Translations under genes and position numbers: made by a program
Shown here: piece after piece, positions 496 to 47,183 of the stretch
How positions within the stretch are numbered: the first letter of the stretch is position 1
Layout of the letters: each line of letters begins with the position of its first letter
Notes under the pieces: model-generated
The model's database searches: none
The model's input: the letters and a program-made list of their open reading frames with translations, nothing else
What the model was told of the DNA's origin: nothing
Source of the DNA: Anaeramoeba ignava BMAN
Taxonomy: Eukaryota; Protista; Anaeramoebae
Reading direction: 5' to 3'
Assembly (NCBI GenBank): GCA_028826165.1
Contig: JAPDFW010000060.1
Coordinates: 372,001-436,000 of the forward strand
Length of the DNA: 64,000 nt

Positions 496-1806
496 TCAAT
501 CCTTGTCCTTTTCTTTTTCTTGCTTCTTCTCTGGAGAAATTGTTTTGTCATTCTCTTTTTGATTAATCTGTTTGGAGGAGTTCTTTCCGACTTCATTGTG
601 ATCAACTTGATCATTGCTTTTTTGATCAAGATCAACTTTAAAATGAACTGAAGGAGTTCCACCAAATTGATCTGGTTGAATATTCATTTCAGGCATTGGA
701 TTGGAAGGCCACATAAAAAAGTTGATCATAGAGTTTGTAAGGTGTTGAGGGGAAAAGGTAATTCCCCGACTTATATCTGAATCATGATGGGAATGTGGTT
801 TTGCATCAATCCTTCGACGCAAGATTGAATATACTTCAAACTCTACATCAAGGTTAGGTCTTTTATACGATAATAAGCTACCCAGATTTCTATGTCCACT
901 TTTCAGTTGAACGATTTGGGAATCCTCCACTCCTGCATCTGATAATTGCGAGATTGATCTCCCTCGAAGGCTATGAAGAACCACATTCTTGCTAATACCA
1001 AACTCTTTCATGACTGCCTGAAAATGTTTTAACAGAGTTCCATGGGTAATGGCTTGATTCCGCAAAAAGTGTTGACCTTTCTTGGCTTTATGGTTAATGG
1101 CCCTAAAGAACCGATTATCAGGAGCATCAGGTAAAATTGATCTTTCGCAATAATAATAATATATAAAGTTGTAGGGGTCCTTCATTTCTGATCCTCCTTG
1201 AAAAAGTTTGGCTCTTTTCGGTTCAAAGTTCGGATTGCTGAATTTTATTTGGTGGTTCTTTTCCTCAATACCAGTGTATTCAAGATATTTCTTTTCATCT
1301 GTTTCTTTCCACTCTAATTGCTTAAGTGTTAATCCTGTTAATTCACCTCCTCGTAAGCATAAATGTTTCCCTAGAAAAAAGAGAGCACCAACTGTAATAT
1401 GTACCGGATTGTCTGTGTCCAAGAGCGTTATCAACCTTGATTCTTCAGCATCATTCATTTGTTCGTGGTGTTTGACATATGATTTAGGGTTGCAACCAAT
1501 TTCTCTGGCTCGATTATCACATACATTCTTCAAGCTTTCAAACTCTGGCTTTTTGAGATCGATTTCTAAATTGTATTTTTTAGACACAAAACGAAAAAGC
1601 ATGGATACATGAGAATAAAATGATTTGAGCTTGTATTCTTGACCATTAAGTTTTCTCAATTGAATAATAAATCTTATCAGTGATTCAATTAAATTTTCCT
1701 TCGAAATCTTCAATTTTTCGTTTTCAATGAACTCGTTCCACTTCTTTTCTATGGAAGAGAGAGCTTTTTGAGTTCCTTTAGGAAGAATTTTAGTTGTTAA
1801 ATCCAT
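496..1806 (-). mobile_element. Tyrosine recombinase, Crypton-like DNA transposon ORF (first ATG at 1806, MDLTTK)
   Basis: Intronless, higher GC than flanks. YR catalytic signature R (LRGGEL), HxxR (HSLRGR), H/Y (SGHRNLGSLLSY). The EEKNHQ motif and DP-Y-Y segment resemble Crypton/DUF3504 recombinases. Confidence 0.8.
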
Positions 1807-1996
1807 TAAAAAAATGAAATGAAAATAAAAACTCTTTTGGTTTTGTTGAAAAAAAAAATTATTTGATCTTTTGATCAATTGATCTACTTTTTTGTTTTTT
1901 TTTTTTTTGTAAATTTTAATTAAAACAAAAATCCAAAAAAAGGATCAAATGATCAAGTTTCTTCTTTTTATTTCTTTTGTTTTTTGACAATAAAAT

Positions 1997-3594: not shown

Positions 3595-5945
3595 TTATTT
3601 AAAATTGGATTTAATTTGAAGTTCAGCTAAATTTGTAATTTGATCCTTAATTTTATTCATCCAATCATTTTTCTGTTCTTCATTTTCAAAATAAATTGTA
3701 TAACCCTTTTTAGAACCAGAAGGAATTAATTGAAGAGAATGTTCTAAATATTTTAAATAAAAAAAATTGGAATTAAATAAATTTTGGAAGGAATTTTTAA
3801 ATGAATTTTTACCTTGACTTGATAAATCTCTTATAAAAGCTCCAGCAAGAGACAAATGACCCTCATATTGATACTTTTTCTTTTTAAATCGGCCAGAAGG
3901 ATTAGCATAAACAATAAGATCATTAAAAAGCCAAAATTTTCTTTCTTCAATTTTTTTGGAAGTTTTTTTTTTCAAAACAGCATCTTGAATAAAAACACGA
4001 CTTGGATGAACAAGACTAAAAGATTTTGGGGTTCCAGAAAGAGTTGAATCAATCTCAAAAAGGATAGTTCGTTGTTCGGCTAATCTTTGTTGTGCTGTGA
4101 TATAAGAAGCAACTTCACCAAGAGATTTATAAACTTGCTCTAAATCTTTATAATCAGGATATTTTTGACTTGTAATTTCTAATAATTCTTTGAATAAAAG
4201 CAGATATTTGTCAATCCGTTGGACTGGTTTTATCAAAAAATCCAGAATACCAAGTCCTTTGCATTCTGGAATAGTTTCCTTTTGGTTTTCAATAAATTTC
4301 TCAAAAACTTTCTTTTTGTAATATTCAGTCACTTTATCGATTGATTCTGTGAGATCCATGGAATAATTATTGTAAACTTTCAGAAAATTCATAAACGGCA
4401 AAAAAATCTTCCCCACATTCAATTTCGCAGCTTCCTTGTCGCCAAGATATTCGCGTTTAAATGCTTGCAATATTTGTTGATTAACTGAAGATATTGTCTC
4501 GATATTAGAAAATATTTTGCGAATATCAGTTTCATTCATAAATTTTTTTTGTTTGAGAGGTTTCATAAAATGTTCAATAATAACCTGTAAATCCTTATTA
4601 TATTCCTCCTCCGATTTAACCAATTCAATGATAATCTTTGCTCTTTTTTCCATCGAATTCTTTTCTTCTTCTTTCAACTTGCTGTTTTCCATCGAAATTT
4701 TCTTTGAAGACGTTTTGTGAGTTTTTGTTTTCTTTTATGAAAAAATTTATTGAAAATATTTGATCCAAAATTTAATATTTTTTTTTTGAATTTTATACTT
4801 CATTTCGATCAGGAGTTTTACTTTGTGATTTGTCTTTCAAATTGTTAGAAATTTTGTTTTTTTCATCTTTTTCTGGACTTTCTTCTATTTTTGTTTATAA
4901 ATTGGAAGAGTTTGAATAAATTGATTTTTTCAAAAAAGAAAAATTTACTTGGAAATTTCATCCAATTCAAGCATTCATGAAATTCTTTTAATGTTCCTCT
5001 TTCTTTCGGATTTAAACTCCATGACTTATTGATTAGTTCAGATAATTCTTTTGGGAAATTATTTGGAAATTCAGGCCTTGCCCCATTTACAACATGAAGA
5101 GTAATCATTAAGGGATTCAAATTTCCAAAAGGTTTTTGTTTGGAGAAAATTTCATATAAAATCATTGATAAACTGAAAATATCACAAGAAGTATCGTAAA
5201 TATTTTCTTTTGTAAAAAGTTCTGGAGCTGAATAACCAAATGAAACTGTAGCTGAAGTTACTTTCAGTGTATTTTCTCTCACTTTTGAAATTCCAAAATC
5301 AGCAATTTTAGGTTGATTATTGATTATCAAAATATTTTCAGGTTTCAAATCACGATGAATAATTGAATTTGAATGAAGAATTTTTATTCCTTCAATAATT
5401 TGTAAAGAATAATCAATTTGTTCTTCAGAAGTTAAATTTGGAATCTTATTAGTTAAATCTCCTTGATTGGCAAATTCCATTACAATTGCAATCATTTTAT
5501 CCATTTCAGTTTTTCCAAACATTTTAATAATTGAAGGATGCTCGAATTTCATTGCTAATTTAAGTTCATTTTCGAATTGTTGATTTGCTTTTTCATCATT
5601 CAAGACATTGATTCTTTTAATAACAACATCTTTTCCTTTCCATTTTCCTTTATAAATCTGGGCTGTTCCTCCTACTGCAAATGGTTTTTGTTCCACTTCT
5701 AATTCTGATAATGGAATAAATGGAACTTTTTGTTCTTTTGATTCAATCTTAATTTTTTCAACAATTTGTAATAAAGAACGATTTAAAATTGGTTTGAATC
5801 CTTCAAATGAACTTCTGCAAAAAATACAATGTTCAACCGTTTTCACACATAATTCACAAATTGAATGACCTTCTTGGCAAATAATCATTGGTTTTCTTTC
5901 TTGTGAATAGTTTTCAAAACACATTGGACAAATTGCCGGATCCAT
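3595..5945 (-). CDS. RING finger - protein kinase (TKL-like) - RhoGEF (DH-PH) fusion protein
   Basis: Exon 1 5945-4949 has a RING (CPMC..C.EGHSIC..C..C..C) and kinase motifs ([14 protein letters not shown]). Phase-1 intron 4948-4885, exon 4884-4799, phase-0 intron 4798-4732. The next exon from 4731 reads KTKTHKTSSKKIS-MENSK, in frame with the DH (ELVKSEEEY, LIKPVQRI) and PH ORF. A further 69-nt intron lies at 3812-3744. Confidence 0.78.
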
Positions 5946-6019
5946 TTTAATAACAAAAAAAAAAAATGAAAAACTTTTAAACACAAGAAAAAGAGGGAAT
6001 GAAAATTGAAAAAAAAATT

Positions 6020-8390
6020 TTTTTGCAATAAAATTAATCAAGAAATGATTTAAAAACTTTTTTATTATTAATATTAAATTAAAATTATTAAAAATAATGA
6101 AATAAAATTGAAACAAAAATGAGATAAAAATTTAATTTAATTTTTAATAATAATTAATTTATTATTTTGCAATAAAATTAATTAAGAAATGATTTAAAAA
6201 CTTTTTTATTATTAATATTAAATTATTATTATTAAAAATAATGAAATAAATTTGAAACAAAAATTGGATAAAAATTTAATTTAATTTTTAATAATAATTA
6301 ATTTATTATTTTGCAATAAAATTAATTAAAAATAATTTAAAAAGAATTTATTATTAATATTAAATTATTATTATTAAAAATAATGAAATAAATTAATTAA
6401 AATATTTTATTTAATGTTTTTACTTAATTTTTAATTATAATTAATTTATTATTTTGTAATAAAATTAATTAAGAAATAATTTTAAAACTTTTTATTATTA
6501 ATATTAAATTATTATTATTAAAAATAAAGAAATAAATTAATTAAAATATTTTATTTATTAATTTACTTAATTTTTAATAATATTAATTTAATATTTTGTA
6601 ATAAAATTAATTAAGAAATAATTTTAAAACTTTTTTATTATTAATATTAAATTATTATTATTAAAAATAAAGAAATAAATTTGAAACAAAAACGAGATAA
6701 AAATTTTATTTAATTTTTAATAATTAATTTATTATTTTGTAATAAAATTAATTAAGAAATGGTTTTAAAACTTTTTATTATTAATATTAAATTATTATTA
6801 TTAAAAATAATGAAATAAAATTGAAACAAAAATTGAATAAAAATTTAATTTAATTTTTAATAATAATTAATTTATTATTTTGCAATAAAATTAATTAAAA
6901 ATAATTTAAAAAGATCTAGTTATTGAATTAAATTATTATTATTAAAAATAAAGAAATAAATTAATTAAAATATTTTGTTTATTATTTTATTTAATTTTTA
7001 ATAATAATTAATTTATTATTTTGCAATAAAATTAATTAAGAAATGGTTTTAAAAACTTTTTATTATTAATATTAAATTAAAATTATTAAAAATAAAGAAA
7101 TAAATTTGAAACAAAAATTAGATAAAATTTTATTTAATTTTTAATAATAATTAATTTATTATTTTGCAATAAAATTAATTAAGAAATAATTTAAAAACTT
7201 TTTTTATTATTAATATTAAATTATTATTATTAAAAATAATGAAATAAATTAATTAAAATATTTTATTTAATGTTTTTACTTAATTTTTAATTATAATTAA
7301 TTTATTATTTTGTAATAAAATTAATTAAGAAATAATTTTAAAACTTTTTATTATTAATATTAAATTATTATTATTATTAAAAAAATAAAAAAAAATAAAT
7401 TAATTTAAAATATTTTATTTATTAATTTACTTAATTTTTAATAATATTAATTTAATATTTTGTAATAAAATTAATTAAGAAATAATTTTAAAACTTTTTA
7501 TTATTAATATTAAATTATTATTATTAAAAATATGAAATAAATTTGAAACAAAAATTGGATAAAATTTTACTTAATTTTTAATTACAATTTATTTATTATT
7601 TTGTAATAAAATTAATTAAGAAATAATTTTAAAAAGAATTTATTATTAATATTAAATTATTATTATTAAAAATAATGAAATAAATTTGAAACAAAAATTG
7701 AATAAAATTTTACTTAATTTTTTAATAATAATTAATTTAATATTTTGCAATAAAATTAATTAAGAAATAATTTAAAAAGAATTTATTATTAATATTAAAT
7801 TATTATGATTAAAAATAATGAAATAAAATTAATTAAAATATTTTATTTATTATTTTATTTAATTTTTAATTATAATTCATTTATTATTTTGCAATAAAAT
7901 TAAATAAAAATAATTTTAAAAAGAATTTATTATTAATATTAAATTTTATTATTAAAAATAATGAAATAAATTTGAAACAAAAATTGAATAAAATTTCACT
8001 TAATTTTTTAATAATAATTAATTTAATATTTTGCAATAAAATTAATTAAAAAATAATTTTAAAAAAGAATTTTATTATTAATATTAAATTATTATTATTA
8101 AAAATAATGAAATAAATTAATTAAAATATTTTATTTATTAATTTACTTAATTTTTAATAATATTAATTTATTATTTTGTAATAAAATTAATTAAGAAATA
8201 ATTTTAAAACTTTTTTATTATTAATATTAAATTATTATTATTAAAAATAAAGAAATAAATTAATTAAAATATTTTATTTATTATTTAATTTAATTTTTAA
8301 TTATAATTCATTTATTATTTTGCAATATAATTAATTAAAAAATAATTTTAAAAAAGATCTAGTTATTGAATTAAATTATTATTAATTTTT
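6020..8390. repeat. AT-rich tandem satellite, ~143 bp unit (family A)
   Basis: The motif ttttg(c/t)aataaaattaattaa recurs at ~6025, 6168, 6312, 6455, 6598 and onward. Confidence 0.9.
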
Positions 8391-8503: not shown

Positions 8504-10783
8504 ATGATCAAATTATTTGCAATTATTTTGATTATTTTTCTTTTAACAAAACAAATTTCCAATAATTATGAGTTAAAAAAAGTTGGAAATCAATGGAATC
8601 GAAAACAAATTACTTATCCAAATAATCCAACCAATAATATTGCATTTGGAGTAAGTATTTCAATTTCCAATTATGTTATGGCAATAGGATCTCCAGGTAA
8701 TAATGGAAATTCTCTTCCTGGAAGAGCTTATGTATTTGAGAAACAAAATTATAATTTGATTCAAGCAGCTCAACTTCCTAATAATAATAATAATCAAAAT
8801 GGTGATTTATTTGGATTCAGTATTTCAATTTCTCAAGATTCTTCTGTTATTCTTGTTGGTGTTCCTTATGCAAATGTTTCTGGAAATGATAGTCAAGGCA
8901 AAGTTTATGTATTTACAAAAAGTGGAAATGAATGGATTCAAACAAAAGAATTAACTGCAAGTGATGGACAAACTGGAGATAATTTTGGATATAGTGTTTC
9001 TATTTCGGAAAGAGTTATTCTGATTAGTTCTCCTTTTGCATCAGTGAATGGAAATTCAGAACAAGGAAAAGTATATGTTTGGGAAGGAAATGATAATGGA
9101 ACAATTTGGCAACAAAAACCTACTTTAACAGCAACAAATGGACAAGCAAATGATCAATTTGGAAAAAGTTTATCAATTTCAAAAAATTCTTCTCTTATTG
9201 TAATTAAATCTCAACAATCTAGTTCTCAACAAGTAACAGCTCATATTTTTCAATCAAATGGAACATATTGGAATGAAGAAGAGAATTTTACTGTAAATGG
9301 AACTCAAGAGTATGATTACGGAGGTCAAATTTCAATTTCTGAAGATGCAACAACTTTTGTTATGGGTGTTACTGGAGATGATTATAATCAAGGGAAAGCA
9401 TATGTTTTTCATTATAATGGCTCTAATTGGAATAATCAAACTATCATTCCAAATAATCCATCAGGTAAATGTTGTTTTGGATTCAGTGTTTCAATTTCTC
9501 AAAATAATCTACTTGTTGGAACTTTTGTACAAAACACCGCATATTTGTTTCAAAATAATGGAAGTGGATGGAATCAAGAAAGACAATTGTTTCCACACAA
9601 TCCAGTTAATGCTGGAGAGTTTGGTCAAGCATTGTCAATTTCAGAAGATATTTTTGCAATTAGTTCTCCTTATTTGGCTTATGATGGATTTGATAATGTG
9701 GGAGGTGTTTACATTTATGAATTTGTTTATGATCAAGTTAATCTTTTGAATTGTAGTTCTTTATTTTCTTCATTTGATTGTTATTGGAATGAAATTCTTC
9801 CAATAACTTCTGATATTGAATATCAAATCAATTATAATTATAATAATAATGAACAATGGGAAACAATTCAATCTCCAATTCTTATTGATAATATTTTCTT
9901 TCAAATTTTCAATTCATCAATTTATCCTAATATTACAGGAAATGTTGATTATACAATTCAAATAAGAGTTTGTAATTCCACATCTCAAATTTGTGGAGAA
10001 AGTTCAGATCCTTTTTTTTTAACAACAAGAATTGATTCAGTTAAGAATTTTACATTAGAATCAATAAAAGCAACATCAGTGATGATTTCATGGAATTCAC
10101 CTAATGTTCCTGTAATCAATTCTATTCCAAAATTAGATCATTATCTTCTTTTTTATCAAAAACAAGATTCAAATGAAACTAAGAATGTTTCAATTTCTAA
10201 TTCATCAACTTCATATGAATTAACTGAATTAGATTCATTATCAAATTATTCAATTTCAATATGTGGATGTGAAACTTATGAATGTTTAGGAAATTATCAA
10301 GGAGAAATTGTTTCAACAACAATTTTGACCAAATTTGGACCTGTTTTAAATCTTCAATGTTCAATTTCCAATTCATTTGATATTTCATGCTATTGGGATA
10401 AACCAAATGATTCAATTAATCCTTCTTATTATAATTTTACTTATCAAGCAATTTCAGAAAATGATAATGGAAATTTTGATACAAATTCAACTTCTCAAAA
10501 TTTTACAGCACAATATTCAAATCAAAATTATCAAATTAATGTTTCAGCTTGTGATTTAAATGAAATATGTGGTGATATTTCTTCAATTCAAATTGGAAAT
10601 CAACAAACCTCTTCACAATCATCAAATTCAAAAACAGTTATAATTGTTTGTTCAACAATTATTCCAGTTGTTTTTATTGTTGGAATTATTTTGATGATTG
10701 TTTTGATAAGGAAAAAAAAGAAAAAAAAGAATAGAGAAGAAGAAAATTTAATCAGTCATTCAGTTTCGAAAGATGATCAGTGA
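8504..10783 (+). CDS. Type I membrane protein: signal peptide, FG-GAP beta-propeller repeats, fibronectin type III domains, TM helix, short cytoplasmic tail
   Basis: Repeated FGxSVSIS...G.VYVF motifs, FN3 Trp/Tyr pattern (ISWNSP...YELTELDSLSNYSISI), hydrophobic TM followed by RKKKKKK. Intronless. Confidence 0.85.
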   Translation: MIKLFAIILIIFLLTKQISNNYELKKVGNQWNRKQITYPNNPTNNIAFGVSISISNYVMAIGSPGNNGNSLPGRAYVFEKQNYNLIQAAQLPNNNNNQNGDLFGFSISISQDSSVILVGVPYANVSGNDSQGKVYVFTKSGNEWIQTKELTASDGQTGDNFGYSVSISERVILISSPFASVNGNSEQGKVYVWEGNDNGTIWQQKPTLTATNGQANDQFGKSLSISKNSSLIVIKSQQSSSQQVTAHIFQSNGTYWNEEENFTVNGTQEYDYGGQISISEDATTFVMGVTGDDYNQGKAYVFHYNGSNWNNQTIIPNNPSGKCCFGFSVSISQNNLLVGTFVQNTAYLFQNNGSGWNQERQLFPHNPVNAGEFGQALSISEDIFAISSPYLAYDGFDNVGGVYIYEFVYDQVNLLNCSSLFSSFDCYWNEILPITSDIEYQINYNYNNNEQWETIQSPILIDNIFFQIFNSSIYPNITGNVDYTIQIRVCNSTSQICGESSDPFFLTTRIDSVKNFTLESIKATSVMISWNSPNVPVINSIPKLDHYLLFYQKQDSNETKNVSISNSSTSYELTELDSLSNYSISICGCETYECLGNYQGEIVSTTILTKFGPVLNLQCSISNSFDISCYWDKPNDSINPSYYNFTYQAISENDNGNFDTNSTSQNFTAQYSNQNYQINVSACDLNEICGDISSIQIGNQQTSSQSSNSKTVIIVCSTIIPVVFIVGIILMIVLIRKKKKKKNREEENLISHSVSKDDQ

Positions 10784-10998: not shown

Positions 10999-13900
10999 AT
11001 GGAAGCTAAACTAATTTCTTGTCCAATTTGTTTTGAAACTTATTCACAAGAAAGAAAACCAATGATAATTTGCCAAGAAGGTCATTCAATTTGTGAATTA
11101 TGTTTAAAGAATATGAATGAATGTCCGTTTTGTAAAATTTCTTTTACAAAATTTAATCCAATTCAAAATCGAGATTTATTAGAAGCTGCAAAACAAAATA
11201 AAAAAAAATCCAATATTATAAATTCTCCAATTATTCCTCTATCTCAACTTGAAATTGAAAAAGAACCATTTGGATATGGTGGATCAGCTGATATTTATAA
11301 AGCCAAATGGGGATTTAATCAAGTTGTTGTTAAGAAATTCAGAATACAAAATGATCCAAAATTGAAAAAACAATTTGAAAATGAAATTCAATTATCTATC
11401 AGATTAAATCATTCAAATATTATTCGAATTTATGGAGTTGTTGAATTTCAAAATACTTTTGGGATTTTAATGGAATATGCAGAACAAGGAAATTTATCTC
11501 AAAAAATTCCATATTTAACATTTCAAGAACAAATTGATTATTCTTTACAAATTATTGAAGGAATCAAATATCTTCATAATAATTCAATTATTCATCGTGA
11601 TTTGAAACCTGAAAATATTTTGATTTCAAATAATAAACCAAAAATTGCTGATTTTGGAATTTCAAAAGTTCATGAACATACAATGAAAAATACAACACCT
11701 GCATTTTCACTAGGTTATTCAGCTCCAGAATTATATCAAGAAGGAAATGCTTATGATACTTCTTGTGATATTTTCAGTTTATCAATTATATTATTTGAAA
11801 TTTTTACAAAGAAAAAATCTTTTGAAAATGAACATCAAATGCTTATTTTTTATAAAATTTCGCAAGGAAAAAGACCAGAATTTCCAAATGATTTCCCAAA
11901 AGAATTAAGTGAAGGAATAAAAAAAGGATGGAATCAAAATCCAAAAGAAAGATGTTCATTGAATGAATTTATTCAAAAATTAGATGAGATGAAACTAAAA
12001 AGTAATTTATTTTTTATCTTCTTCATTTTCAAAAAAACAATCAATTTTCTCATTTCAAAATTATATTCACAAACACAATTCAAATTCACAATTAAAATTA
12101 AATTCAGATTCACAAATAAAATCAGATTCAGATTCAGATTCACAAATAAAATCAGATTCAAATTCAGATTCACAAATAAAATCAGATTCAGATTCAGATT
12201 CACAATTAAAATCAGATTTAGATTCAGATTCACAAATAAAATCAGATTCAGATTCAGATTCACAATTAAAATCAGATTCAGATTCAGATTCACAATTAAA
12301 ATCAGATTTAGATTCAGATTCAAATTCAGATTCACAAATAAAATCAGATTTAGATTCAGATTCAGATTCAAATTTGAAATCAAAATCAAAATCAAAAAGA
12401 AAATCAAAATCAAAATCAAAAAGAAAATCAAAATCAAAAAGAAAATCAAAAAGAAAATCAAAACCAAAATTAGCATCAGATTCAGACTCAGATTTAAAAT
12501 CATTCCAAACAAATCAACATAAAACAAATAAATATCAAACAAATCAACATAAAACAAATCAATATAAAACAAATTCCAATCAACAGAAAAAAAACATTTC
12601 TTTATCCAAGATTTCATATTCCATTCCAAACAGTGATCAAGGTAAAATTGATTTATTCTAAAACATTTCAATTTTAATTCCAATTCAATTTAAAATCAAA
12701 AAATCAAAAAATCAAAAAATCAAAAAATCAAAAACAAAATTTTCAAATTATCTGATTCAATTAATTAATTAATTAATTATAATAACAAATTTATTGAATT
12801 CGAAAATATTCATTTATTAATTGTTGTTTTTTATTCCATTTTTTTTGTGATTAAATTCAAAAACCTAAACAAAAATAGTGATAAATCCTCAAATTAATTT
12901 AATGAAAAATAAGAACAAAAAAGAAGAAAAAAAAGATAATTCAATGAACAATTTACAAAATAATGTTAAACCTGATAAAAAAATCAAACCTGTAAAAAAG
13001 GTAAATGAATTCCCTAATATAAATAACAAAATTTTAATTTAAAGAAATTAAAACAAATTCTTGATTAAAAACTCTTGAATTTTTTGATTTTTCATTTTGA
13101 AATTATTAGGATTTTGATGTTCGTTTTTTCTTAGTTATTCAATTTGAAAAATTAATAATATTATTATTTATATTCATTTTATCAATCAAATATTTAAGAA
13201 AAAATAACTTATTATTATTTGGATTGAATTCAAAAAAAAATAACAAATTTTGTTTTTCTCTTTTTTTTTCTTTCAACAAAATTTCAAAATAGTATTGGTT
13301 CAAAATTATGTTAATTGGATTTGTTTCTGGAAAAAGTACAATTTTGGAAAGATATGTTGATGGAACTTTTAGGCAAGTAAATTTGCAAACGATCGGATAT
13401 GATTTCAGATTAAAATATCTGGAAATTGATGGAAAAAAAATAAAACTCGGGATTTGGGATTCATCTAGTCCAGGTTTGCAATTTATTTTTGAATAATTCA
13501 AAAAACAATTTAAATTTTTTTCTTTCTTCTTTTATCCTTCTTTTTTTGGATTATTTAGAAAGATACAGAAGCTGCGTAATGCGTAATTAATTAATGAAAT
13601 TATTTCTTTTATTTCTTTTATTTCTTTTCTTGATAATTTAACAATTTAATACTTTTATTATTTGATTATTCCTATTTATAATTCTGAAATTTGTTTTTTG
13701 TTTTTTTTATTTAATTCATTTTTAATCATTTGATATTCAAACATAATTTATTTAAAATTGAAATTTAAAAATTTAAAATTAGATTATGCGAGGAAAATGG
13801 ATGGATTTTTGATTGTTTATAATATTACTAATTCATATTCTTTTAACAAAGTTCCTGAATTTCTTCAGCTTATTGAAAAAAATAACTTGTCAAATTATCC

Positions 13901-14189: not shown

Positions 14190-15350
14190 TTCCGAAATGA
14201 AATAATAATTTATTTATTATTTTACAATAAAATTAATCAAAAAATAATTTAAAAAAGAATTTATTATTAATATTAAATTATTACGATTAAAAATAAAGAA
14301 ATAAATTAATTAAAATATTTTGTTTATTTTTTTATTTAATTTTTAATAATAATTTATTTAATATTTTACAATAAAATTAATTAAGAAATAATTTTAAAAA
14401 AGAATTTATTATTAATATTAAATTATTATTATTAAAAATAATGAAATAAATTTGAAACAAAAATTGAATAAAATTTTATTTAATTTTTTAATAATAATTT
14501 ATTTAATATTTTGTAATAAAATTAATTAAAAATGATTTTAAAAAGAATTTATTATTAATATTAAATTATTATTATTAAAAATAATGAAATAAATTAATTA
14601 AAATATTTTATTTATTATTTTTACTTAATTTTTAATTATAATTTATTTAATATTTTGTAATAAAATTAATTAAGAAATAATTTTAAAAAGAATTTATTAT
14701 TAATATTAAATTATTATTACTAAAAATAATGAAATAAATTTGAAACAAAAATTGAATAAAAAATTTTATTTAATTTTTAATAATAATTTATTTAATATTT
14801 TTGTAATAAAATTAATTAAAAATGATTTTAAAAAGAATTTATTATTAATATTAAATTATTATTATTAAAAATAATGAAATAAATTAATTAAAATATTTTA
14901 TTTATTATTTTACTTAATTTTTAATAATAATTAATTTAATATTTTTGTAATAAAATTAATTAAGAAATGATTTTAAAAAGTATTTATTATTAATATTAAA
15001 TTATTATTATTAAAAATAATGAAATAAATTTGAAACAAAAATTGAATAAAATTTTTCCGAAATGAAATAATAATTTATTTAATATTTTGCAATAAAATTA
15101 ATTAAGAAATAATTTAAAAAAAGAATTTATTATTAATATTAAATTATTATTATTAAAAATAATGAAATAAATTAATTAAAATATTTTATTTATTATTTTA
15201 TTTAATTTTTGATTATAATTTATTTATTATTTTGCAATAAAATTAATTAAGAAATAATTTTAAAAAATAATTTATTATTAATATTAAATTATTATTATTA
15301 AAAATAATGAAATAAATTAATTAAAAAATTTTATTTATTATTTTATTTAA
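14190..15350. repeat. Satellite family A, second array
   Basis: Same ~143 bp unit as 6020-8390. Confidence 0.9.
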
Positions 15351-15355
15351 TTTAG

Positions 15356-16532: not shown

Positions 16533-19500
16533 ATGGAAGAACCAGAAATTTGTCCAATTTGTTTTAAAAATTATTCAAATGAAAGAAAACCAATGGTTAT
16601 TTGCAAAGAAGGACATAATATTTGTTCTTTTTGCGTAACAAAAACGGATCATTGTATTTTTTGTAAAAGTTCATTCAAAAATTTTAAACCAATTATGAAC
16701 GAATCTTTATTAGCATTTATTAAATCAATTCAAAAAAATTCAAATGAGCCAATTATTCCAATTATTCCTTTATCAGAATTGGAAGTTGAATTAGAACCAT
16801 TTGCTAAAGGAGGAACTGCTCAAATTTTCAAAGCAAAATGGAAAGAAAAAGATGTTGTTATCAAAAGATTAATATTTCTAAATGATGAAAAAAGAAATCA
16901 ACAATTTGAAAACGAAATTAAATTAGGAATGAAATTAAATAATCCTTATATTATCAAAATCCATGGGAAAACTAAAATGAATAATGTTTTGGGAATTGTA
17001 ATGGAATATGCAGAACAAGGAGATTTATCTCAAAAAATTCCAAATTTAACATTTGAAGAACAAATTGAATATTCTTTACAAATTATTAAAGGAATTGAAG
17101 TTTTACATTCAAATTTAATTATTCATCGTGATTTAAAACCTGAAAATATTTTGATTTCAAATAATAAACCAAAAATTACTGATTTTGGAATTTCAAAAGT
17201 AAGAGAACACACTTTGCAAGTTACTTCAGTTATAGTTTCATTCCGTTATTCTGCTCCAGAAATGCTTGAATCAGGAAACAAATATGATAGATCTTGCGAT
17301 ATTTACAGTTTATCAATGATTTTATATGAAATTTTCTCAAAGAAACAACCTTTTGAAAATGAAAATGGGATGGCTATTCCAGTAAAAGTAATGCAAGGAG
17401 AAAGACCTGAATTTCCCATTAATTTCCCAAAAAAATTAAGTGAATTAATCAAAAAAGGATGGAGTCCAAATCCAGAAGAAAGATGTTCATTAAATGAATT
17501 TACTAAATGTTTGAATATGATGAAAAATGGAGGTAATTTCAAAAATTAAAATCAAATTCAACAAAAATTAAAATAAAATTCAACAAAAATTAAAATCAAA
17601 TTCAACAAAAATAGAAGTAGAACTAATAATTTATAAAGAAAAAAAACCAACTATTCCAAGAACAAGAAATTCTTTTCAATCAATTTTAAAGAGATTTGAA
17701 CAGACTTCCAATAAACCAAAACCAGAATCAGAATCAAACCCAGAACCAAAACTAAAACCAATCAACACAGATCAAATCCATTCTAATCAACAAAATTCAA
17801 ATGAACAAGAATCAGGACCAAAATCAAAATCAAAACCAAACCCAGGACCAAAACCAAAACAAAACAAATCAAATGAAATTAAACCAGAACCAGAACCAGA
17901 ATCAGAATCAGAATCAAAATCAGAACCAGAATCAGAAAGAATAATAAAATCAGAAGTTGATTTGAAGGTAAAACATTGATATTTAAGAAATATAAAAAAA
18001 AAAAGATTAAATTTTCAATCATTTCCATTTCAACAAAAAAAAATAATACAAAACAATTAGACTGCACAAAAAATACTTGATGAAGTAATAGCAAAAGTAC
18101 GAACTTTGGAAATCCAAAAAGAAAAAAAAAAATCTGAAGAAGCAAAAAAAAAAGCATTAAAAGAACTTAAACCCTATTTCCAAAAACTTCGAGATTCAAT
18201 TCGCAAACATGATCAAAGTAAATATTTATTCATATTGTTTAAATCAAATGAAAAAATGTGTAAAATGAATTAATCCAATTTATTCCATTTTTTAATAAAA
18301 AGATACCTCAGAAAAATTAGAAGAAATTGATATTAATTTTATTTTTCAATCTATGAATGCCTTTCCAATAGATGAATTTATTCAAGAAAGTTGTTGTATG
18401 GCTCTAAGAAAATTCACTGAAGCAGAAACAAGTAAAGATTGTTAAATTAAATTTAATTTTCAAAACTCTATTAATTTTTCTTTCCAAAAAAAAAAGGAAT
18501 TTCATTTAATTTTCCAGATTTTAATGGATTTGATTTAATTATCAAAGCAATGAATAATTTTCCATTCAAAAAATTTCTTCAACTTCAATCTTTACTAATT
18601 CTTTTTCAAATGGGAAAATCAAGTCGTAAATTTCATTTTAATCAATCAAAAAAATTAATTAATCAAAAAAATTAATTAATCAAAAACCAAAGTAAATCGA
18701 AGCCAAATTAAACAATATTCTGGAGATGATACAATATTTTCAACAATGGCTAATTTTCCAGAAGATAATAAGATTTTTTATACAGGAACTGAAGCTTTAA
18801 CACGTTTAGAATTTGGTCAAAATTGTAAATTTACATTTTTCAATAAAAAACAAAACAAAACAAAACAAAATAGATGATCCAATCTTTTTCCTTTTTTCAT
18901 TTTAATAATTCATTAATTAATTTTCCTTTCTTTTATTTTAATCTAATTATTTGAAAAACAAAATAGATATTACTCGAAACTTTAATTTAAAGAAAAGTAA
19001 AAATATTGTTTCATTTTTCCAAAATCAAAAAGAAAAAATTTTAATTTGAAAAATTATGAAATTATTTTTATTAGGTCATGTAGAAAAACTAGATCAAAAA
19101 AAATTAAAAGCATTACAAGAAGAATTTAATAAAAAAAAATATGTAAATCACATATTTTTAACAAGAATTCATTCATTTATTTATTTATTTATTTTATTCA
19201 TTTATTTATTCATTTATTTATTCATTCATTCATTTATTTATTAATTTATTTATTTTTATTTTGTTTTAAATAGTTTTTCAATGTTTGGTCACAGGTAAAC
19301 TTTTTTTCTTCCAAATAAAATTTTAAAAAAATAATTGAGAAGAAAATTCATTTAATCAACATTTCAAAAATGTTTGTTTTTCTGATTAAAAATTTAGAAT
19401 CTTTTTATTTCATTTCTATGCAAAAAGAACGAAGAAATTGATTTTGAATTTTACAAATTTTTGAAAAATCAGAAGTCACTAAACGAGAGATGTATAAATT

Positions 19501-22500
19501 ATTTTATTCAAATATCTAAAACAAAACATTTTTTTTCTTATTAAATTTTTAATTCCTTTTTTTTAAAAAAAAATATTAAAAATTATAAAAAATCTAGAAA
19601 GTAATTCTAAATTAAAAAACAAATCTTTGATCTAATCTAAAAATTTCAACTTATTTTAATCTTTCTTTTTATTTTGTAGACTATATTCCAAAAAACCGCA
19701 GCTGTACAAAAAACACTTTTATCAAAATATTTATTTAAATTTATTTGAATTAATTTATATTATTTTTTAGAAAGTAATTCATATTTTAATTTTAAAATTA
19801 AAATTAATTTTGTTTTTTTTCTTCTTCTTCAAATATTTAAAAAGAATACACCAATTCATTATTTATGTCAAAATGAATCAATTAATTTGAGGATAATAAT
19901 ATTAATGTTTGATTATAGAGCTAATTTTAATTTAAAAGGAGTAAATTTTGAATTTGACTTTTTTGTTATTAATTATAAAAATATTCATTTTTTTTGTTTT
20001 TTTAAAACGAAATTGAAAATTTTAGGAAGTAAAAAATAAACCACATAAAAAAAATCATTAAAAAAAAAATTATTTAAAATTGAAATAAAAAGGATGTAAA
20101 AATAACAAAGGATTTCTAAATTGAATTGAATCAAAAATTTATTCATTTATAAAATGATTGAAATAGGAAGTAAAAAAATAATAAAATGAAAATTAAATTA
20201 TTTATCCCAAATTCTTTTCAATTAAATTAATCAAAAAATCAAAGTTAACACCATTACATTATTTATGCCAAAATCCATCAATAAATTTGGAAATCATTAA
20301 ATTAGTGGCACATTATAGAACCGATTTTTATTCTAAAGAAGTAAATTTATTTTTAATTTCATTTTTAATTTCATTTTTAATTTTATTTATGAATAATTGA
20401 ATAGAAAGTAATCTTATTAATTTGAATTAACAAAATTTATTTATTATTTTCTGAATTCCAAAAAGGATGTAAAAATAAAATTTGTTTTTGCTTTTAAAAT
20501 CTTAAAAATTTTAAAAAGGAAGTAAAAATATCATAATAATAAAAATAAAAATAGAAACTAAATTTAAAATAAAACAAAAAGGATACACCAATGCATTATC
20601 TTTTTAAAAATCCATCAATAACAACAGAGATTATTGAATTCTTCAGGGAAAAAGGATATAGTTTTAATTCTCAAAATGTAAATAAATAAATATTTAATTT
20701 AAACTTTTCTTTTGAAATCAAGTTTTTGATAAAATTTTTCAAAATTATTTCCCAAATAGACTGTAAAAATATCATTTCAAGATAAAAATTAATTTTTGTT
20801 TTATTCCCTTTTTTTTATATGGGAAATAGTTTGTAAAAATTTAACTATTTTTAAATCCAAAAAGAATTGAATTTGAATTTCTTTTTCTCAAAACTCATTT
20901 TTAGCAAGTAATTCATTTTCTTCTTCTTCTTTTTTTCTTAAGATTCACATAATTTTTCAATAATATTTATTAATTTAACATTTTCATACATTTCTAAAAG
21001 ATGTCTCCTATTCATTACTTGTGTAAAACCCATCAATTACATTTGAAATGATTTATGCATTAGTTCAACGTGGAGTTAATTGAATTTAAGTGGAGTAAAT
21101 TTTTATCTCTTAAATTTTTTTGAGAAATAATAAACATATCATTGAAAAACAAAATAATTTTAGCAAGTAAACTATTTAAAAGGGAAAAACATATTTTTTT
21201 CTCTAATAATATTAAAATATAAATTAAATATATTAGCAAGTAAATATTTTTTCAGAATTTTAATCCTTTTTATTTTCCAATCCAAAAAAAAATAGGCTGT
21301 AAAAATAATAATAATTATTATTATTATCAAATAAATTGTGTTTATTTTTTAAATAAAAATAATAAAAATAATAAAAATAGAATGTAAATCATTTAAATTT
21401 ATTCTTTCTTCTTTTATTTTAATTATTAATTTGTTTTTGAAATGATTTTTTTTGTGTTTATAAAATAGCATGTAAATAATTCAAAAAAAAAAATCAAAAA
21501 TTACTTATTAAATTGATTATAATTTCCCTATAAAAAAATAATAAAATTTAAAATTAGTTTGTAAAAAAAAATATAAAATCAAACATTTTTTTATTGATAA
21601 AAATTTTGAATTAATTAATTATTCCAAAAAATAAACAAACAAAAGGATGTAAAATAAAACGATAGAAAAATATTTTTTTTTTAATTTATTTATTCAATAC
21701 TAAAATGATTTTATTATTATTATTTTTTTACATATAAAAAAGCATACACCTTTGCATGATTTATGTAATAATCCTTCAATTACAAAAGAGATTGTTGAAC
21801 TATTAATTAATAATGGAGCTAATTTTCATATTCAATGGGTAAAAATTTATAATAAATTTTTTAAAATTAGATTAATTTTTGATTTAATTTTTATATAAAT
21901 CAAATAGAAAGTAAATTATTCATCTTAAGATTTTTTTATATTTTTATTATTAAATTCTTTTTCAATTTTCAATTTTGCTTTTTTTTTTTGAAAAAAATAA
22001 TAATAAATAGATTGTAAAATAATTAATAGATATAAACAAAAATAAATTTGAAATTAATCATAACCTTTTTTTCTTATTAATTTTTATGAAACAGAAAGTA
22101 AATTAGAAATGATAAAAAATTTTTTTGAAATGATTTCCTTTTATTTAATGGAATATTTTAACAAATAGGGAGTAAAATTAGAAATGTTTAAAAGAAAAAT
22201 TCAACTAAACTTAAATTTTATTAATGAATTTAGGATGTAAATAATCTTTTTTTTGATTTAATAATTAATATAAATATTTTTTCTTTATAAATAATCAGGC
22301 AGTAATCATTTAAAATTTTTAATTAAAATTTGAACAAAAAAAATATTTTTTGAGATTAAAAATTAAATTGAAATAAAATTAGTATGTAAATCAAATTAAT
22401 AAAAAACTAATGATAAAATATTTTTCTTACTTAAATTTTAAATAAAATAGTTTGTAAATTTTAAATTATTTTTTAATTTTGAACAATTATTTAAAAATAA

Positions 22501-23621
22501 AAATAATATTTTAATTGAATAAACAGAGAGTAATAAAATAAAATTAATTTAATTTAATTTAATTTAATTTAATTTAATTTAATAAAAAATTTAGGGAGTA
22601 AATGAATTCAAAATCAAAATCAAATAACAATAATTTAAATAATTTTCTTCCTATTTTTTTTAGTACTCTCCACTTCATTTCCTCTGTAATAACAAAAGGA
22701 TTACAACAGAAATGATTGATATTTTGATTAAAGGTGGATCAAATTTCAATTTAGGAGAAGTAAAAAATCTATTTAATTTTTTTTTCTTTGATAATTATTA
22801 AAATTTATTTGGATTGAAAATTATTAAATAGATTGTAAATAAATCTTATATTAATCAAAAAAAAATTTTTTTAAAATTCAAGTTTAATTTTCATTTAAAT
22901 TCTAAATTCTAAATTCTAAATTCTAAATTTAAATAGGATGTAAATAAATAATATTTCCTAAATAAAAATAAATTCAAATTTTAACTAAATTCTAACTTTA
23001 AATTAAAATTTAATAAATAGGAAGTAAATAAATGCAAAAATAATTTGATATTTTTAATTTTCTTTTTTTCTTCTTAAAATAATTCCTCAATAGCAAGTAA
23101 AAAATTTATTTAAAATTTTTTTTAAATGATTCCAAACATTTTAATTTGAAAATTTTTCCAAAAATAAAAGGGAGTAAATGATAAATTTATTTAATTCTTT
23201 TTTTTTAGAACAAATTAGTTAAATTCATTTTTGATTTCCAAATAAAAAAATGGATAATTGATTAAATAGCAAGTAAATTGATTTAAATAATTAAATTTTG
23301 ATTTACTTTTTATTATTAAATTCAATTAATTAGCCTGTAAATAATAAGATAAAATTTATTTCCAAATAACAAATGAATTAAATATATCATTTAAAAATTA
23401 AATAGGGAGTAAATTTAATCCAAAAAAATAATCTTAAAAAAAATCTTAAAAAAATATTTGTTTTTTAGGCAACTGTATTGCATTGTCTTTGTGTGAATTC
23501 ATTATTATCAGAAGAAATGATTAAATTATTGAAAGGAACCAATGCTGATTTTTCTATAAAAAGTTATAATGGAACAACACCAAAAGATTTTCTTCCTAAT
23601 CATCTTCAAAAACTGATTTAA
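16533..23621 (+). CDS. RING - kinase - linker - ARM-like repeats - ankyrin repeats with single-codon microexon arrays (~53 exons)
   Basis: In-frame exons 16533-17532, 17639-17967, 18061-18217, ARM-like 18303-18431, 18497-18625, 18693-18824, then 18967-18996, 19075-19142, 19274-19294. ANK exons 19398-19491, 19845-19940, 20245-20340, 20582-20677, 21001-21094, 21743-21838, 22664-22759, 23469-23621(stop). 3-nt exons lie between the ANK exons. Two ANK exons are 94 nt, which would break the frame. Confidence 0.75.
19598..23408 (+). other. Seven arrays of 3-nt microexons (36 total) between ankyrin exons
   Basis: AG|NNN|GTA motifs spaced by ~55-105 nt AT-rich introns. Codons by array: K,K / E,D,E / K,D,E / T,F,Q / Q,Q,A,N,H,F,D / K,I,K,G,D,A,Y,F,R,G / I,D,E,Q,G,Q,P,G. 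Confidence 0.85.
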
Positions 23622-24125: not shown

Positions 24126-24224
24126 TTCTTTTTCTTTTTCTTCAAATTCAAAAAAGAATAAAAAAATTTCGAAATTCAAAAACACAAAATTATTTTTCTT
24201 AATTTTTGGATTGAATTATTTCTG

Positions 24225-24415
24225 AATTTTAAAAAAGAATTTATTATTAATATTAAATTATTATTATTAAAAATAATGAAATAAATTAATTAAAATATTT
24301 TATTTATTATTTTATTTAATTTTTAATAATAATTTATTTAATATTTTACAATAAAATTAATTAAGAAATAATTTTAAAAAAGAATTTATTATTAATATTA
24401 AATTATTATGATTAA
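24225..24415. repeat. Satellite family A, short remnant
   Basis: Matches the unit at 6020-8390. Confidence 0.85.
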
Positions 24416-32454: not shown

Positions 32455-34175
32455 TTAATTAATTTTTTAATAAATAAAATATTAAAAATTAAATCTATTT
32501 TGATTTATTATTTATAATAAATTTATTTTATTTAATTATTTTAAACAAATTTTCAAATTAAATAATAAATTAAAATTAATTAATTTTATTATTATTTTTT
32601 ATTAATTAATTTTTTAATAAATAAAATATTAAAAATTAAATCTATTTTGATTTATTATTTATAATAAATTTATTTTATTTAATTATTTTAAATAAATTTC
32701 TAAATTAAATATTAAAATAAATTAAAATTAATTTTTAATAAATAAAATATTAAAAATTAAATCTATTTTGATTTAATATTTATAATAAATTTATTTTATT
32801 TAATTATTTTAAATAAATTAAAATATTAAAAATTAATTTTATTATTATTTTTATTAATTAATTTTTAATAAATAAAATATTAAAAATTAAATATATTTTG
32901 ATTTATTATTTATAATAAATTTATTTTATTTTAATTATTTTAAAAATAAATTTTTTCTAAATTAAATAAATAAATAAAAATTAAAATTTTAATTATTATT
33001 TATTATTATTTTTAATTAATTTTTAATAAATAAAATATTAAAAATTAAATCTATTTTTGATTTATTATTTATAATAAAAATTTATTTTATTTAATTATTT
33101 TTAAATAAATTTCCAAATTAAATAATAAATTAAAATTAATTAATTTTATTATTATTTTTTTAATTAATTTTTTAATAAATAAAATATTAAAAATTAAATC
33201 TATTTTGATTTATTATTTATAATAAAATTATTTTATTTAATTATTTTAAATAAATTTCCAAATTAAATATTAAATTAAAATTAATTAATTTTATTATTAT
33301 TTTATTAATTAATTTTTTAATAAATAAAATATTAAAAATTAAATCTATTTTGATTTATTATTTATAATAAATTTATTTTATTTAATTATTTTAAATAAAT
33401 TTTCAAATTAAATAATAAATAAATTAATTAATTAATTATTTTTTTTTATTATTTTTAATAAATTTTTTTTAATAAATAAAATATTAAAAATTAAATCTAT
33501 TTTTAATTTATTATTTAAACTAAATTTATTTTATTTAATTATTTTAAATAAATTTCCCCCCAAATTAAATATTAAATTAAAAATTAATTAATTTTATTAT
33601 TATTTTTTAATTAATTTTTAATAAATAAAATATTAAAAATTAAATCTATTTTTTTAATTTATTTTTTTATAATAAATTATTTTTTTATTTAATTAATTTT
33701 AAATAAATTTCAAATTAAATAATAAATTAAAATTAATTAATTTTATTATTATTTTTATTAATTAATTTTTTAATAAATAAAATATTAAAAATTAAATCTA
33801 TTTTGATTTATTATTTATAATAAAATTATTTTATTTAATTATTTTAAATAAATTTTCAAATTAAATAATAAATTAAAATTAATTAATTTTATTATTATTT
33901 TTTTAATAAATTTTTAATAAATAAAATATTAAAAATTAAATCTATTTTGATTTATTATTTATAATAAAATTATTTAATTTAATTATTTTAAATAAATTTC
34001 CAAATTAAATAATAAATTAAAATTAATTTAATTTTATTATTATTTTTTTATTTAATTTTTTAATAAATAAAATATTAAAAATTAAATCTATTTTGATTTA
34101 TTATTTATAATAAAATTTATTTAATTTAATTATTTTAAATAAATTTCCAAATTAAATAATAAATTAAAATTAATT
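32455..34175. repeat. AT-rich satellite, ~148 bp unit (family B)
   Basis: aaatattaaaaattaaatctattttgatt recurs about every 148 bp. Confidence 0.9.
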
Positions 34176-34217
34176 TCATTTTTTTCATTTTTTTCATTAA
34201 TTTTTTTTTTAATAAAA

Positions 34218-34873
34218 ATGAAAAGAAGAAATATTGAAGAAAAAGAAAAAGAAAAAGAAAGAAATTTAACACAAAAAGATCAAGGAATAATAGGAAAATA
34301 TGTAGAAGATGAAAAAACACAACAAATTGAAAAACCAAAACAAACAAATTTTGATATTTTTATGATGTATTTTGAAACAATAATATTTTGGATTATCACA
34401 ATATTTATCAATAAAAAATGGGAAATTTTGAACAATTTAATATCAAATGAAAAGCTTCATAATAAATGGATATTTTTATCAGCAATTTGCACAATAAATT
34501 TTATTGCAATTTTTATTTATTTAGCAGTTTATCTTCCAAAAATTAAAAAAATTAATGTTGATTGGTCAAGTTATGAAAATATAATAAATAATCATAAAAA
34601 TGCTATGTTTTTTGCAACAATATCAGGAGTACTTTTAACTCCTTTGTAAGTTATAAGTTTAATTATTAAAAAAAGAAGATTTATTAAAGAAAAAAAAAAT
34701 AATTTAAAAAATCGGATAAAAAATTTTTTAATTAAAAAAAATATTTGATTTTTTTATTTAAATTAAGTTTTGTTATTGGAATTTGGCCAGTTTATAGATT
34801 ATTTTCAATTCCTTTTACTGCTGCTTTTGGTCTTACTTTTTTATTTACTGTTAGACACATTCCTTTTAATTAA
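34218..34873 (+). CDS. TMEM128-like small multi-pass membrane protein (2 exons)
   Basis: Exons 34218-34645 and 34768-34873. IFIYLAVYLP...W..YE and FVIGIWPVY resemble the TMEM128 family. Confidence 0.65.
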
Positions 34874-47111: not shown

Positions 47112-47183
47112 TTTTAAATTATCAAAAAACAAAAAAAAAAAAAACTGAAAAAATTTTTTCCATTTTTTTTTTCCGATTTAAAA

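What the first reader, a model, noticed from the sequence alone, without database searches (positions are those of the whole stretch)
21095..23468. Oversized microexon arrays (7, 10 and 8 codons) suggest combinatorial splice diversification
Seen: the last three arrays far exceed the 3 residues of a canonical hairpin and contain chemically diverse residues (aromatic, charged, Pro, Gly). The last two arrays end in Gly, the consensus residue of D-x-x-G-x-TPLH. All exons are phase 0, so any subset keeps the frame. Arithmetic only: choosing 3 in order gives 35 x 120 x 56 = 235,200 isoforms, and free inclusion gives 2^25. Inference: this may be a Dscam-like, splicing-based generator of variable binders at single-residue resolution, possibly protist innate immunity or symbiont recognition. 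The alternative is constitutive inclusion giving long fixed loops.
Basis: inference. Interest (0 to 1): 0.9.

Follow-up and report, generated by a model that had tools for sequence, protein, structure and literature searches.

The report
Ankyrin loops spelled by one-codon exons
An ankyrin-repeat gene of the anaerobic amoeba Anaeramoeba ignava writes three long binding loops one amino acid per 3-base exon (7, 10 and 8 in a row); the one transcript found, from a sister gene, keeps every tiny exon, so the loops look long and fixed within a gene and varied between genes, not shuffled by splicing.

Summary
Window 19550-23470 has 36 AG-NNN-GTAA units against 0.41 expected, and the last three arrays hold 7, 10 and 8 single-codon exons between 96-nt ankyrin exons of a predicted RING-kinase-ARM-like-ANK gene of Anaeramoeba ignava. 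The Dscam-like reading is not supported. The only transcript I found with oversized arrays (EukProt Trinity contig of sister gene C73) includes all 14 and all 8 microexons in genomic order. Paralog loops are conserved at their ends as linear peptides. The equivalent last loop lies inside one continuous exon and is also 3-14 residues long. Donor sites in long arrays are no weaker than in 3-codon arrays. There is no tandem-duplicate or shared-element signature. Best reading (0.75): near-constitutive inclusion gives three CDR-like long hairpins, diversified in the germ line among paralogs. Low-level in-frame skipping is not excluded: no reads could be laid, and this gene's own transcript was not found. 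NCBI models skip these exons, and no paper I searched reports them. This scan noted the architecture before in other A. ignava genes (s1-686561, s1-682794, s1-689350).

The parts
16533..17532 (+). RING-like finger plus protein kinase exon, probably the first exon; phase-1 donor at 17533 joins in frame to the acceptor at 17614
   Evidence: Pfam Pkinase E 1.6e-50, Sina_RING 4.6e-5; frame continuity; paralog model P0008 is a RING-kinase-ANK fusion. The join is predicted, not seen in RNA.
17615..18219 (+). Low-complexity linker and helical exon
   Evidence: Open frame whose 3' part matches paralog P0005
18305..19294 (+). Several exons of an ARM-like helical region (boundaries approximate)
   Evidence: Match to P0005, which has a weak ARM_LRRK2 hit, E 8e-5, below the curated cut-off
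19397..19490 (+). Degenerate first ankyrin (cap) exon; frameshifted in this assembly, intact (33 codons) in the near-identical copy
19598..19773 (+). First loop: a 3-nt exon at 19598, a possible 24-nt exon (about 19682-19705, weak GTACAA donor) and a 3-nt exon at 19771
   Evidence: the 24-nt exon is inferred
19845..20907 (+). ANK1-ANK3 (96-nt exons at 19845, 20245, 20582), each followed by three single-codon exons (EDE, KDE, TFQ), giving 35-aa repeats
21001..21094 (+). ANK4 exon; 94 nt here, with two single-base losses relative to the copy at G000:C61:334644 (minus strand)
21164..21648 (+). Loop A: 7 single-codon exons at 21164, 21237, 21296, 21381, 21469, 21558, 21646 (QQANHFD)
   Evidence: matches the C128 paralog intron by intron
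21743..21838 (+). ANK5 exon (96 nt, 32 aa)
   Evidence: Pfam Ank above cut-off
21908..22597 (+). Loop B: 10 single-codon exons at 21908, 22011, 22095, 22169, 22234, 22299, 22383, 22451, 22527, 22595 (KIKGDAYFRG)
22664..22759 (+). ANK6 exon (96 nt); clustered codon replacements at positions 8-12 and 31-32 relative to the near-identical copy
22832..23408 (+). Loop C: 8 single-codon exons at 22832, 22937, 23021, 23094, 23171, 23270, 23334, 23406 (IDEQGQPG)
23469..23621 (+). Terminal exon: ANK7, an in-exon 3-residue loop, C-cap and stop

Best explanation
The gene encodes an intracellular RING-kinase-ARM-like-ankyrin protein. Each ankyrin helix pair sits on a 96-nt exon and each hairpin residue on its own 3-nt exon. 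The 56-102-nt introns are most likely removed one by one by intron definition, so nearly all microexons are kept. The last three hairpins become fixed 7-, 10- and 8-residue fingers instead of 3, like CDR loops on an ankyrin scaffold. Diversity arises in the germ line across a paralog family: loop codons are substituted, single codons are gained or lost when an AG or GT is created or erased (frame is never broken), and helix-1 surface codons are replaced in clusters. Shown: exon layout, coding signal, full inclusion in one paralog transcript, paralog variability. Inferred: inclusion in this gene, intron definition, and a role as a sensor or substrate binder for the kinase and RING modules, possibly towards bacteria or symbionts.
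For: (1) EukProt A. ignava Trinity protein P0060 equals the genomic exons of paralog C73:176485-178408 piece by piece, with 14/14 and 8/8 microexons in order. Free inclusion at 0.5 per exon gives this with probability 2^-22; read as one random molecule it implies at least about 0.87 inclusion per exon at the 5% level. (2) The equivalent last loop lies inside one continuous exon and is 3-14 residues in 12 paralogs; an intronless A. flamelloides relative has 7- and 8-residue loops in the same register. (3) Loop ends are conserved in 10 non-redundant genes: loop A ends aromatic-Asp in 7/10 (p 5e-5), loop C starts I/V/T in 9/10 (p 5e-5) and ends Gly in 6/10 (p 0.005). (4) Donor scores in long arrays are not weaker than in arrays of up to 3 (7.14 vs 6.60); acceptors are equal (p 0.62). 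(5) No tandem-duplicate signal among introns of an array (3 of 1656 pairs z>5) and no shared k-mers above shuffles. (6) 0 stops in 401 microexon codons against 24.8 expected. (7) The fully included P0060 folds as ankyrin repeats, mean pLDDT 91.7, with a lower-confidence protruding 14-residue loop. (8) Close paralogs differ by erased microexon splice sites. (9) Intron retention outnumbers exon skipping in most protists (PMC2397502).
Against: Only one transcript, from a paralog. An assembler reports the dominant path, so minor isoforms are invisible. No RNA run was listed, so no reads were laid. The window copy has frameshifts upstream of loop A and may not be expressed as modelled. All single-codon exons are phase 0, which permits skipping. 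Loop codons show no purifying selection at the amino-acid level, which fits either model. Apparent losses of microexons between paralogs could be assembly errors.
Confidence: 0.75

Rival explanations
1. MEG-like partial skipping: the full loop dominates, but stochastic or regulated in-frame skipping of single codons gives a tail of loop variants that the cell uses.
For: All exons are symmetric. With 25 exons, even 0.98 inclusion leaves only 60% of molecules full length (arithmetic). Schistosome micro-exon genes use symmetric exons this way (PMC4350168). Longer introns occur in paralogs, so skipping is physically possible.
Against: The one transcript has 22 of 22; splice sites are not weak; exon skipping is rare in short-intron protists.
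Confidence: 0.17
2. Dscam-like selection: a fixed small subset (for example 3) is chosen from each array to rebuild a canonical hairpin.
For: Array sizes exceed the 3-residue norm and the last two arrays end in Gly.
Against: Full inclusion in P0060; no duplicated alternatives or shared docking-like elements; long loops exist inside continuous exons; loop ends are conserved as a linear peptide.
Confidence: 0.03
3. The window copy is a decaying duplicate, and the functional gene is the inverted copy about 60 kb upstream. The architecture is real but this copy is not translated through the arrays.
For: Frameshifts at 19397-19490 and 21026/21082 relative to the copy.
Against: The deletions cluster in one stretch (26 vs 7 in 19300-21200; 4 vs 14 after), which looks like unpolished consensus. 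All microexon sites are intact, and the substitutions in ANK6 and ANK7 are sense codons at surface positions.
Confidence: 0.2
4. The motifs are intronic noise, and the 32-aa exons are joined directly, as in the NCBI models.
For: NCBI models join the 96-nt exons with no loop residues.
Against: 36 observed vs 0.41 expected; no stop codons; P0060 contains the residues; intronless relatives have 35-aa repeats.
Confidence: 0.01

Closest known systems
Schistosome micro-exon genes (MEGs; described in PMC4350168, citing DeMarco et al. 2010)
   Same: Runs of very small symmetric exons; a fast-evolving multigene family.
   Different: MEGs are secreted or membrane proteins mostly made of microexons, with demonstrated variable splicing. 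Here the exons are uniformly 3 nt, confined to the hairpins of a folded intracellular ankyrin scaffold, and the one transcript skips none.
Arthropod Dscam1 mutually exclusive exon arrays (own knowledge)
   Same: Arrays of exons placed at the variable positions of a binding scaffold.
   Different: Dscam alternatives are whole duplicated exons, one chosen per array through docking and selector pairing. Here array members are not duplicates, no shared elements were found, and all are included.
Brown algal ROCO genes with one LRR per exon (PMC11378527, PMC3341825)
   Same: One repeat per exon, diversifying selection, candidate intracellular receptors with signalling domains in a non-animal eukaryote.
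   Different: There whole repeats are shuffled and alternatively spliced. Here the variable loop itself is cut into single codons and no alternative splicing was seen.
Plant 1-15-nt microexons (PMC8831610)
   Same: Tiny coding exons, usually included, widely missed by annotation.
   Different: In the passages I read they are isolated or few per gene; I saw no runs of 7-31 consecutive 3-nt exons.
LoopDARPins (engineered; PDB 4k5c among the fold matches) and natural ankyrin proteins
   Same: Ankyrin fold with an elongated hairpin that adds to the binding surface (works like).
   Different: Natural, three or four long loops per protein, lengths of 3-31 set by exon count; no ligand known.

Membership tests
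Ankyrin repeat proteins | TPLH-type helix-turn-helix repeat with a hairpin | tested here: met
   Pfam Ank above cut-off for exon 21743-21838; the model of paralog P0060 matches ankyrin structures
Coding microexons | Canonical AG/GT flanks, far above chance, free of stop codons | tested here: met
Coding microexons | Present in mature RNA | tested here: inconclusive
   Met for paralog C73; no RNA found for this gene
Dscam-type mutually exclusive arrays | One or a fixed subset of the array per transcript | tested here: not met
   P0060 has 14/14 and 8/8; tested on a paralog only
Dscam-type mutually exclusive arrays | Array members are tandem duplicates | tested here: not met
   3 of 1656 intron pairs within arrays reach z>5
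Dscam-type mutually exclusive arrays | Docking and selector elements in introns | tested here: inconclusive
   No k-mer shared among introns above shuffles; RNA pairing not tested directly
Schistosome-type MEGs | Tandem symmetric microexons | tested here: met
Schistosome-type MEGs | Variant transcripts by differential splicing | not testable with these tools
   No RNA run listed; the single contig shows none
Schistosome-type MEGs | Secreted or membrane product mostly encoded by microexons | tested here: not met
   Predicted RING-kinase-ANK protein; microexons give about 36 of roughly 1000 residues. No signal-peptide predictor was run.
Innate immune or symbiont receptor | Binds a non-self ligand or is induced on challenge | not testable with these tools
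   Only indirect signs: paralog expansion and clustered surface substitutions

The most novel reading that the evidence does not exclude
On top of a dominant full-length form, single-codon exons are skipped in frame at low or regulated rates, so each gene yields a tail of binders that differ by single loop residues. This would be splice-level diversification at one-residue resolution in a protist that houses bacterial symbionts.
Probability: 0.17. Interest if true: 0.9.

Novelty: new variant of a known kind. Interest (0 to 1): 0.68.

Why it matters
Runs of 7-31 consecutive 3-nt exons, with 14 in a row seen spliced in one transcript, lie beyond any exon layout I could find in the papers searched. 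They are a natural test of pure intron definition and of the lower limit on exon size. They also offer a frame-safe way to evolve loop length one residue at a time in a binder family. The public A. ignava models checked lack these loop residues, so their predicted binding surfaces are wrong. The splicing-based diversity generator would be far more important, but present evidence is against it.

Tried and rejected
The look-up of sequencing runs listed no RNA run, so read laying could not be used. The look-up of encoding contigs had no contig for P0060, so its nucleotide sequence was not seen. Three homolog searches found no further A. ignava transcript proteins and none for this gene; the length limits leave a full-length product of about 1000 aa outside their range. 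Literature searches for Anaeramoeba plus microexon and for single-codon exons found nothing relevant; the genome paper has no hit for 'ankyrin' and none on microexons. DeMarco 2010 was not held. My parser first gave 11 codons for loop B of paralog C128; one was an overlap artefact and the count is 10, as here. Tandem duplication as the recent origin of the arrays was rejected. The claim that loop codons change far faster than the DNA around them was not reproduced for long arrays (0.058 vs 0.060 per base; the pairs were filtered for alignable flanks and are not independent).

Full report
OBSERVATION. The region 19550-23470 holds 36 AG-NNN-GTAA units on the plus strand. Dinucleotide shuffles give 0.41 on average and at most 3, and other spacings are not enriched. 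Between 96-nt ankyrin exons the arrays read EDE, KDE, TFQ, then 7 (QQANHFD), 10 (KIKGDAYFRG) and 8 (IDEQGQPG) codons. In the last three arrays the introns are 56-102 nt. ANK4 (21001-21094) is 94 nt in this assembly. A near-identical inverted copy about 60 kb upstream has it intact, and the window copy shows 26 short deletions against 7 insertions in 19300-21200 but 4 against 14 afterwards. I read this as an unpolished stretch, without being able to exclude decay.

IDENTITY. The best protein matches are NCBI models of Anaeramoeba ignava whose contig lengths equal those of G000 contigs. Upstream lies a RING-like finger plus kinase exon, whose phase-1 donor joins the next exon in frame, then an ARM-like region and eight ankyrin repeats. 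The paralog model P0008 has the same RING-kinase-ANK order. The NCBI models of these paralogs join the 32-aa exons directly and omit the microexon residues. Intronless relatives show 35-aa periodicity, so three residues is the family's baseline loop.

FAMILY. In the genome regions I could fetch, about 15 genes share the layout. The same three final loops are oversized: loop A 7-13, loop B 4-14 and loop C 4-31 codons in ten non-redundant genes. There is no stop among 401 microexon codons against 24.8 expected (this count includes near-duplicates and three overlap artefacts). The window gene and paralog C128 match intron by intron in order, with the same 7, 10 and 8 exons, four amino-acid changes and one silent change.

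TRANSCRIPT TEST. P0060 is an EukProt Trinity ORF of A. ignava. Compared piece by piece with paralog C73, it has the tail of one ANK exon, all 14 microexons, the next exon, all 8 microexons and the terminal exon, with no mismatch. A choose-3 rule cannot give this, and free inclusion at one half gives it with probability 2^-22. Treated as one random molecule, it bounds mean inclusion at about 0.87 or more. Limits: it is one assembled contig of a sister gene and shows the dominant path only. No RNA run was listed, so this gene's isoforms were not seen.

GENOMIC TESTS. (a) The loop after the last repeat lies inside one continuous exon and so cannot be chosen by splicing. It is 3, 6, 7, 13 or 14 residues in 12 paralogs, with the same kinds of residues. 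An intronless A. flamelloides gene has 7- and 8-residue loops in the same register. (b) Loop ends are conserved as a linear peptide: loop A ends aromatic-Asp in 7 of 10, loop C starts I/V/T in 9 of 10 and ends Gly in 6 of 10. These motifs were picked by eye, so the p values are descriptive. (c) Donors in long arrays score 7.14 against 6.60 in short ones, and acceptors do not differ, so there is no sign of the weaker sites typical of cassette exons. (d) Introns within an array are not duplicates and share no k-mers above chance, unlike Dscam. (e) The fully included P0060 folds as ankyrin repeats (mean pLDDT 91.7, about 64 in the long loop) and matches ankyrin and DARPin structures, a LoopDARPin among them.

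WHERE DIVERSITY COMES FROM. The two C61 copies differ by 1.3% in introns and at none of the microexon codons compared. They carry about 15 non-synonymous changes at exon positions 1, 6, 9-12, 31 and 32 (pN 0.13) against pN 0.003 elsewhere. I chose these positions partly after seeing the differences, and pS there is also high (0.14), so short conversion tracts fit as well as selection. Across alignable paralogs, microexon codons change about as fast as flanking introns (0.058 vs 0.060 per base in long arrays), and every changed codon in that set altered the amino acid. Close paralogs C71 and C20 differ in loop length through erased AG/GT sites or a microsatellite expansion, though assembly error could mimic some of these.

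MECHANISM. Short AT-rich introns with GTAA donors are most likely recognised by intron definition, which dominates in most protists, where retention outnumbers skipping (PMC2397502). Each intron is removed on its own, so exon size hardly matters and the codons are joined in series. The product is a signalling protein with three long fingers on its C-terminal repeats. A sensing or substrate-binding role is inferred from the architecture and the variability; no ligand is known, and a link to the symbionts described in PMC11550330 is untested.

COMPARISON AND VERDICT. It resembles schistosome MEGs in layout (PMC4350168), brown algal ROCO genes in one-repeat-per-exon design (PMC11378527) and LoopDARPins in the product. 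It fails the Dscam tests I could run. I found no paper describing it. Earlier notes of this scan report the same layout in other A. ignava genes; s1-686561 reached the same all-included reading, which I checked independently here and which may rest on the same contig. Observation confirmed; interpretation partly supported; new variant of a known kind; interest 0.68.

Noticed in passing
G000:C61 about 332000-341000, minus strand (L032-L033): Inverted near-identical copy (about 95%) of the window gene about 60 kb upstream. The microexon codons compared are the same, but ANK6 and ANK7 carry clustered codon replacements; the window version is the derived one relative to paralog C128 at most of them.
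   Followed up: partly
L044-L045 (G000:C104:964392-966760): An array of 31 consecutive single-codon exons between two ankyrin exons, all introns under 150 nt.
   Followed up: partly
L048-L050 (G000:C79:356807-386502); equal-scoring exon hits on C42, C108, C67, C51, C25, C57, C142: A paralog near a contig end whose microexons are separated by introns of up to 3-4 kb; identical-scoring exons recur on several contigs, possibly subtelomeric copies.
   Followed up: no
window 496-1878, minus strand: Intronless ORF with a weak phage-integrase (tyrosine recombinase) match, E 3.4e-5, below the cut-off; possibly a Crypton-like element.
   Followed up: partly
window 4863-6116 (-), 10999-12522 (+), 16533-17549 (+): Three related RING-like finger plus kinase exons in one window, each apparently followed by an intron.
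   Followed up: no
window 6017-8384, 14201-15353, 32831-34224; short piece near 24200-24400: Dispersed AT-rich satellite of about 144-145 bp period between genes.
   Followed up: no
window 45024-47132, minus strand: Intronless ankyrin-BTB gene of a different repeat type in the same window, with no microexons.
   Followed up: partly
window 8504-10783, plus strand: Predicted membrane protein with FG-GAP repeats and fibronectin III domains, integrin-alpha-like.
   Followed up: no
window about 19682-19705: A possible 24-nt exon with a weak GTACAA donor between two single-codon exons, conserved in the copy and in C128; the NCBI model of C128 includes these residues.
   Followed up: partly
P0060 (EukProt c20457_g1_i1.p2): The ORF is labelled complete but starts at a Met inside an ankyrin exon, which hints at a retained intron or frame break in the array upstream.
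   Followed up: no
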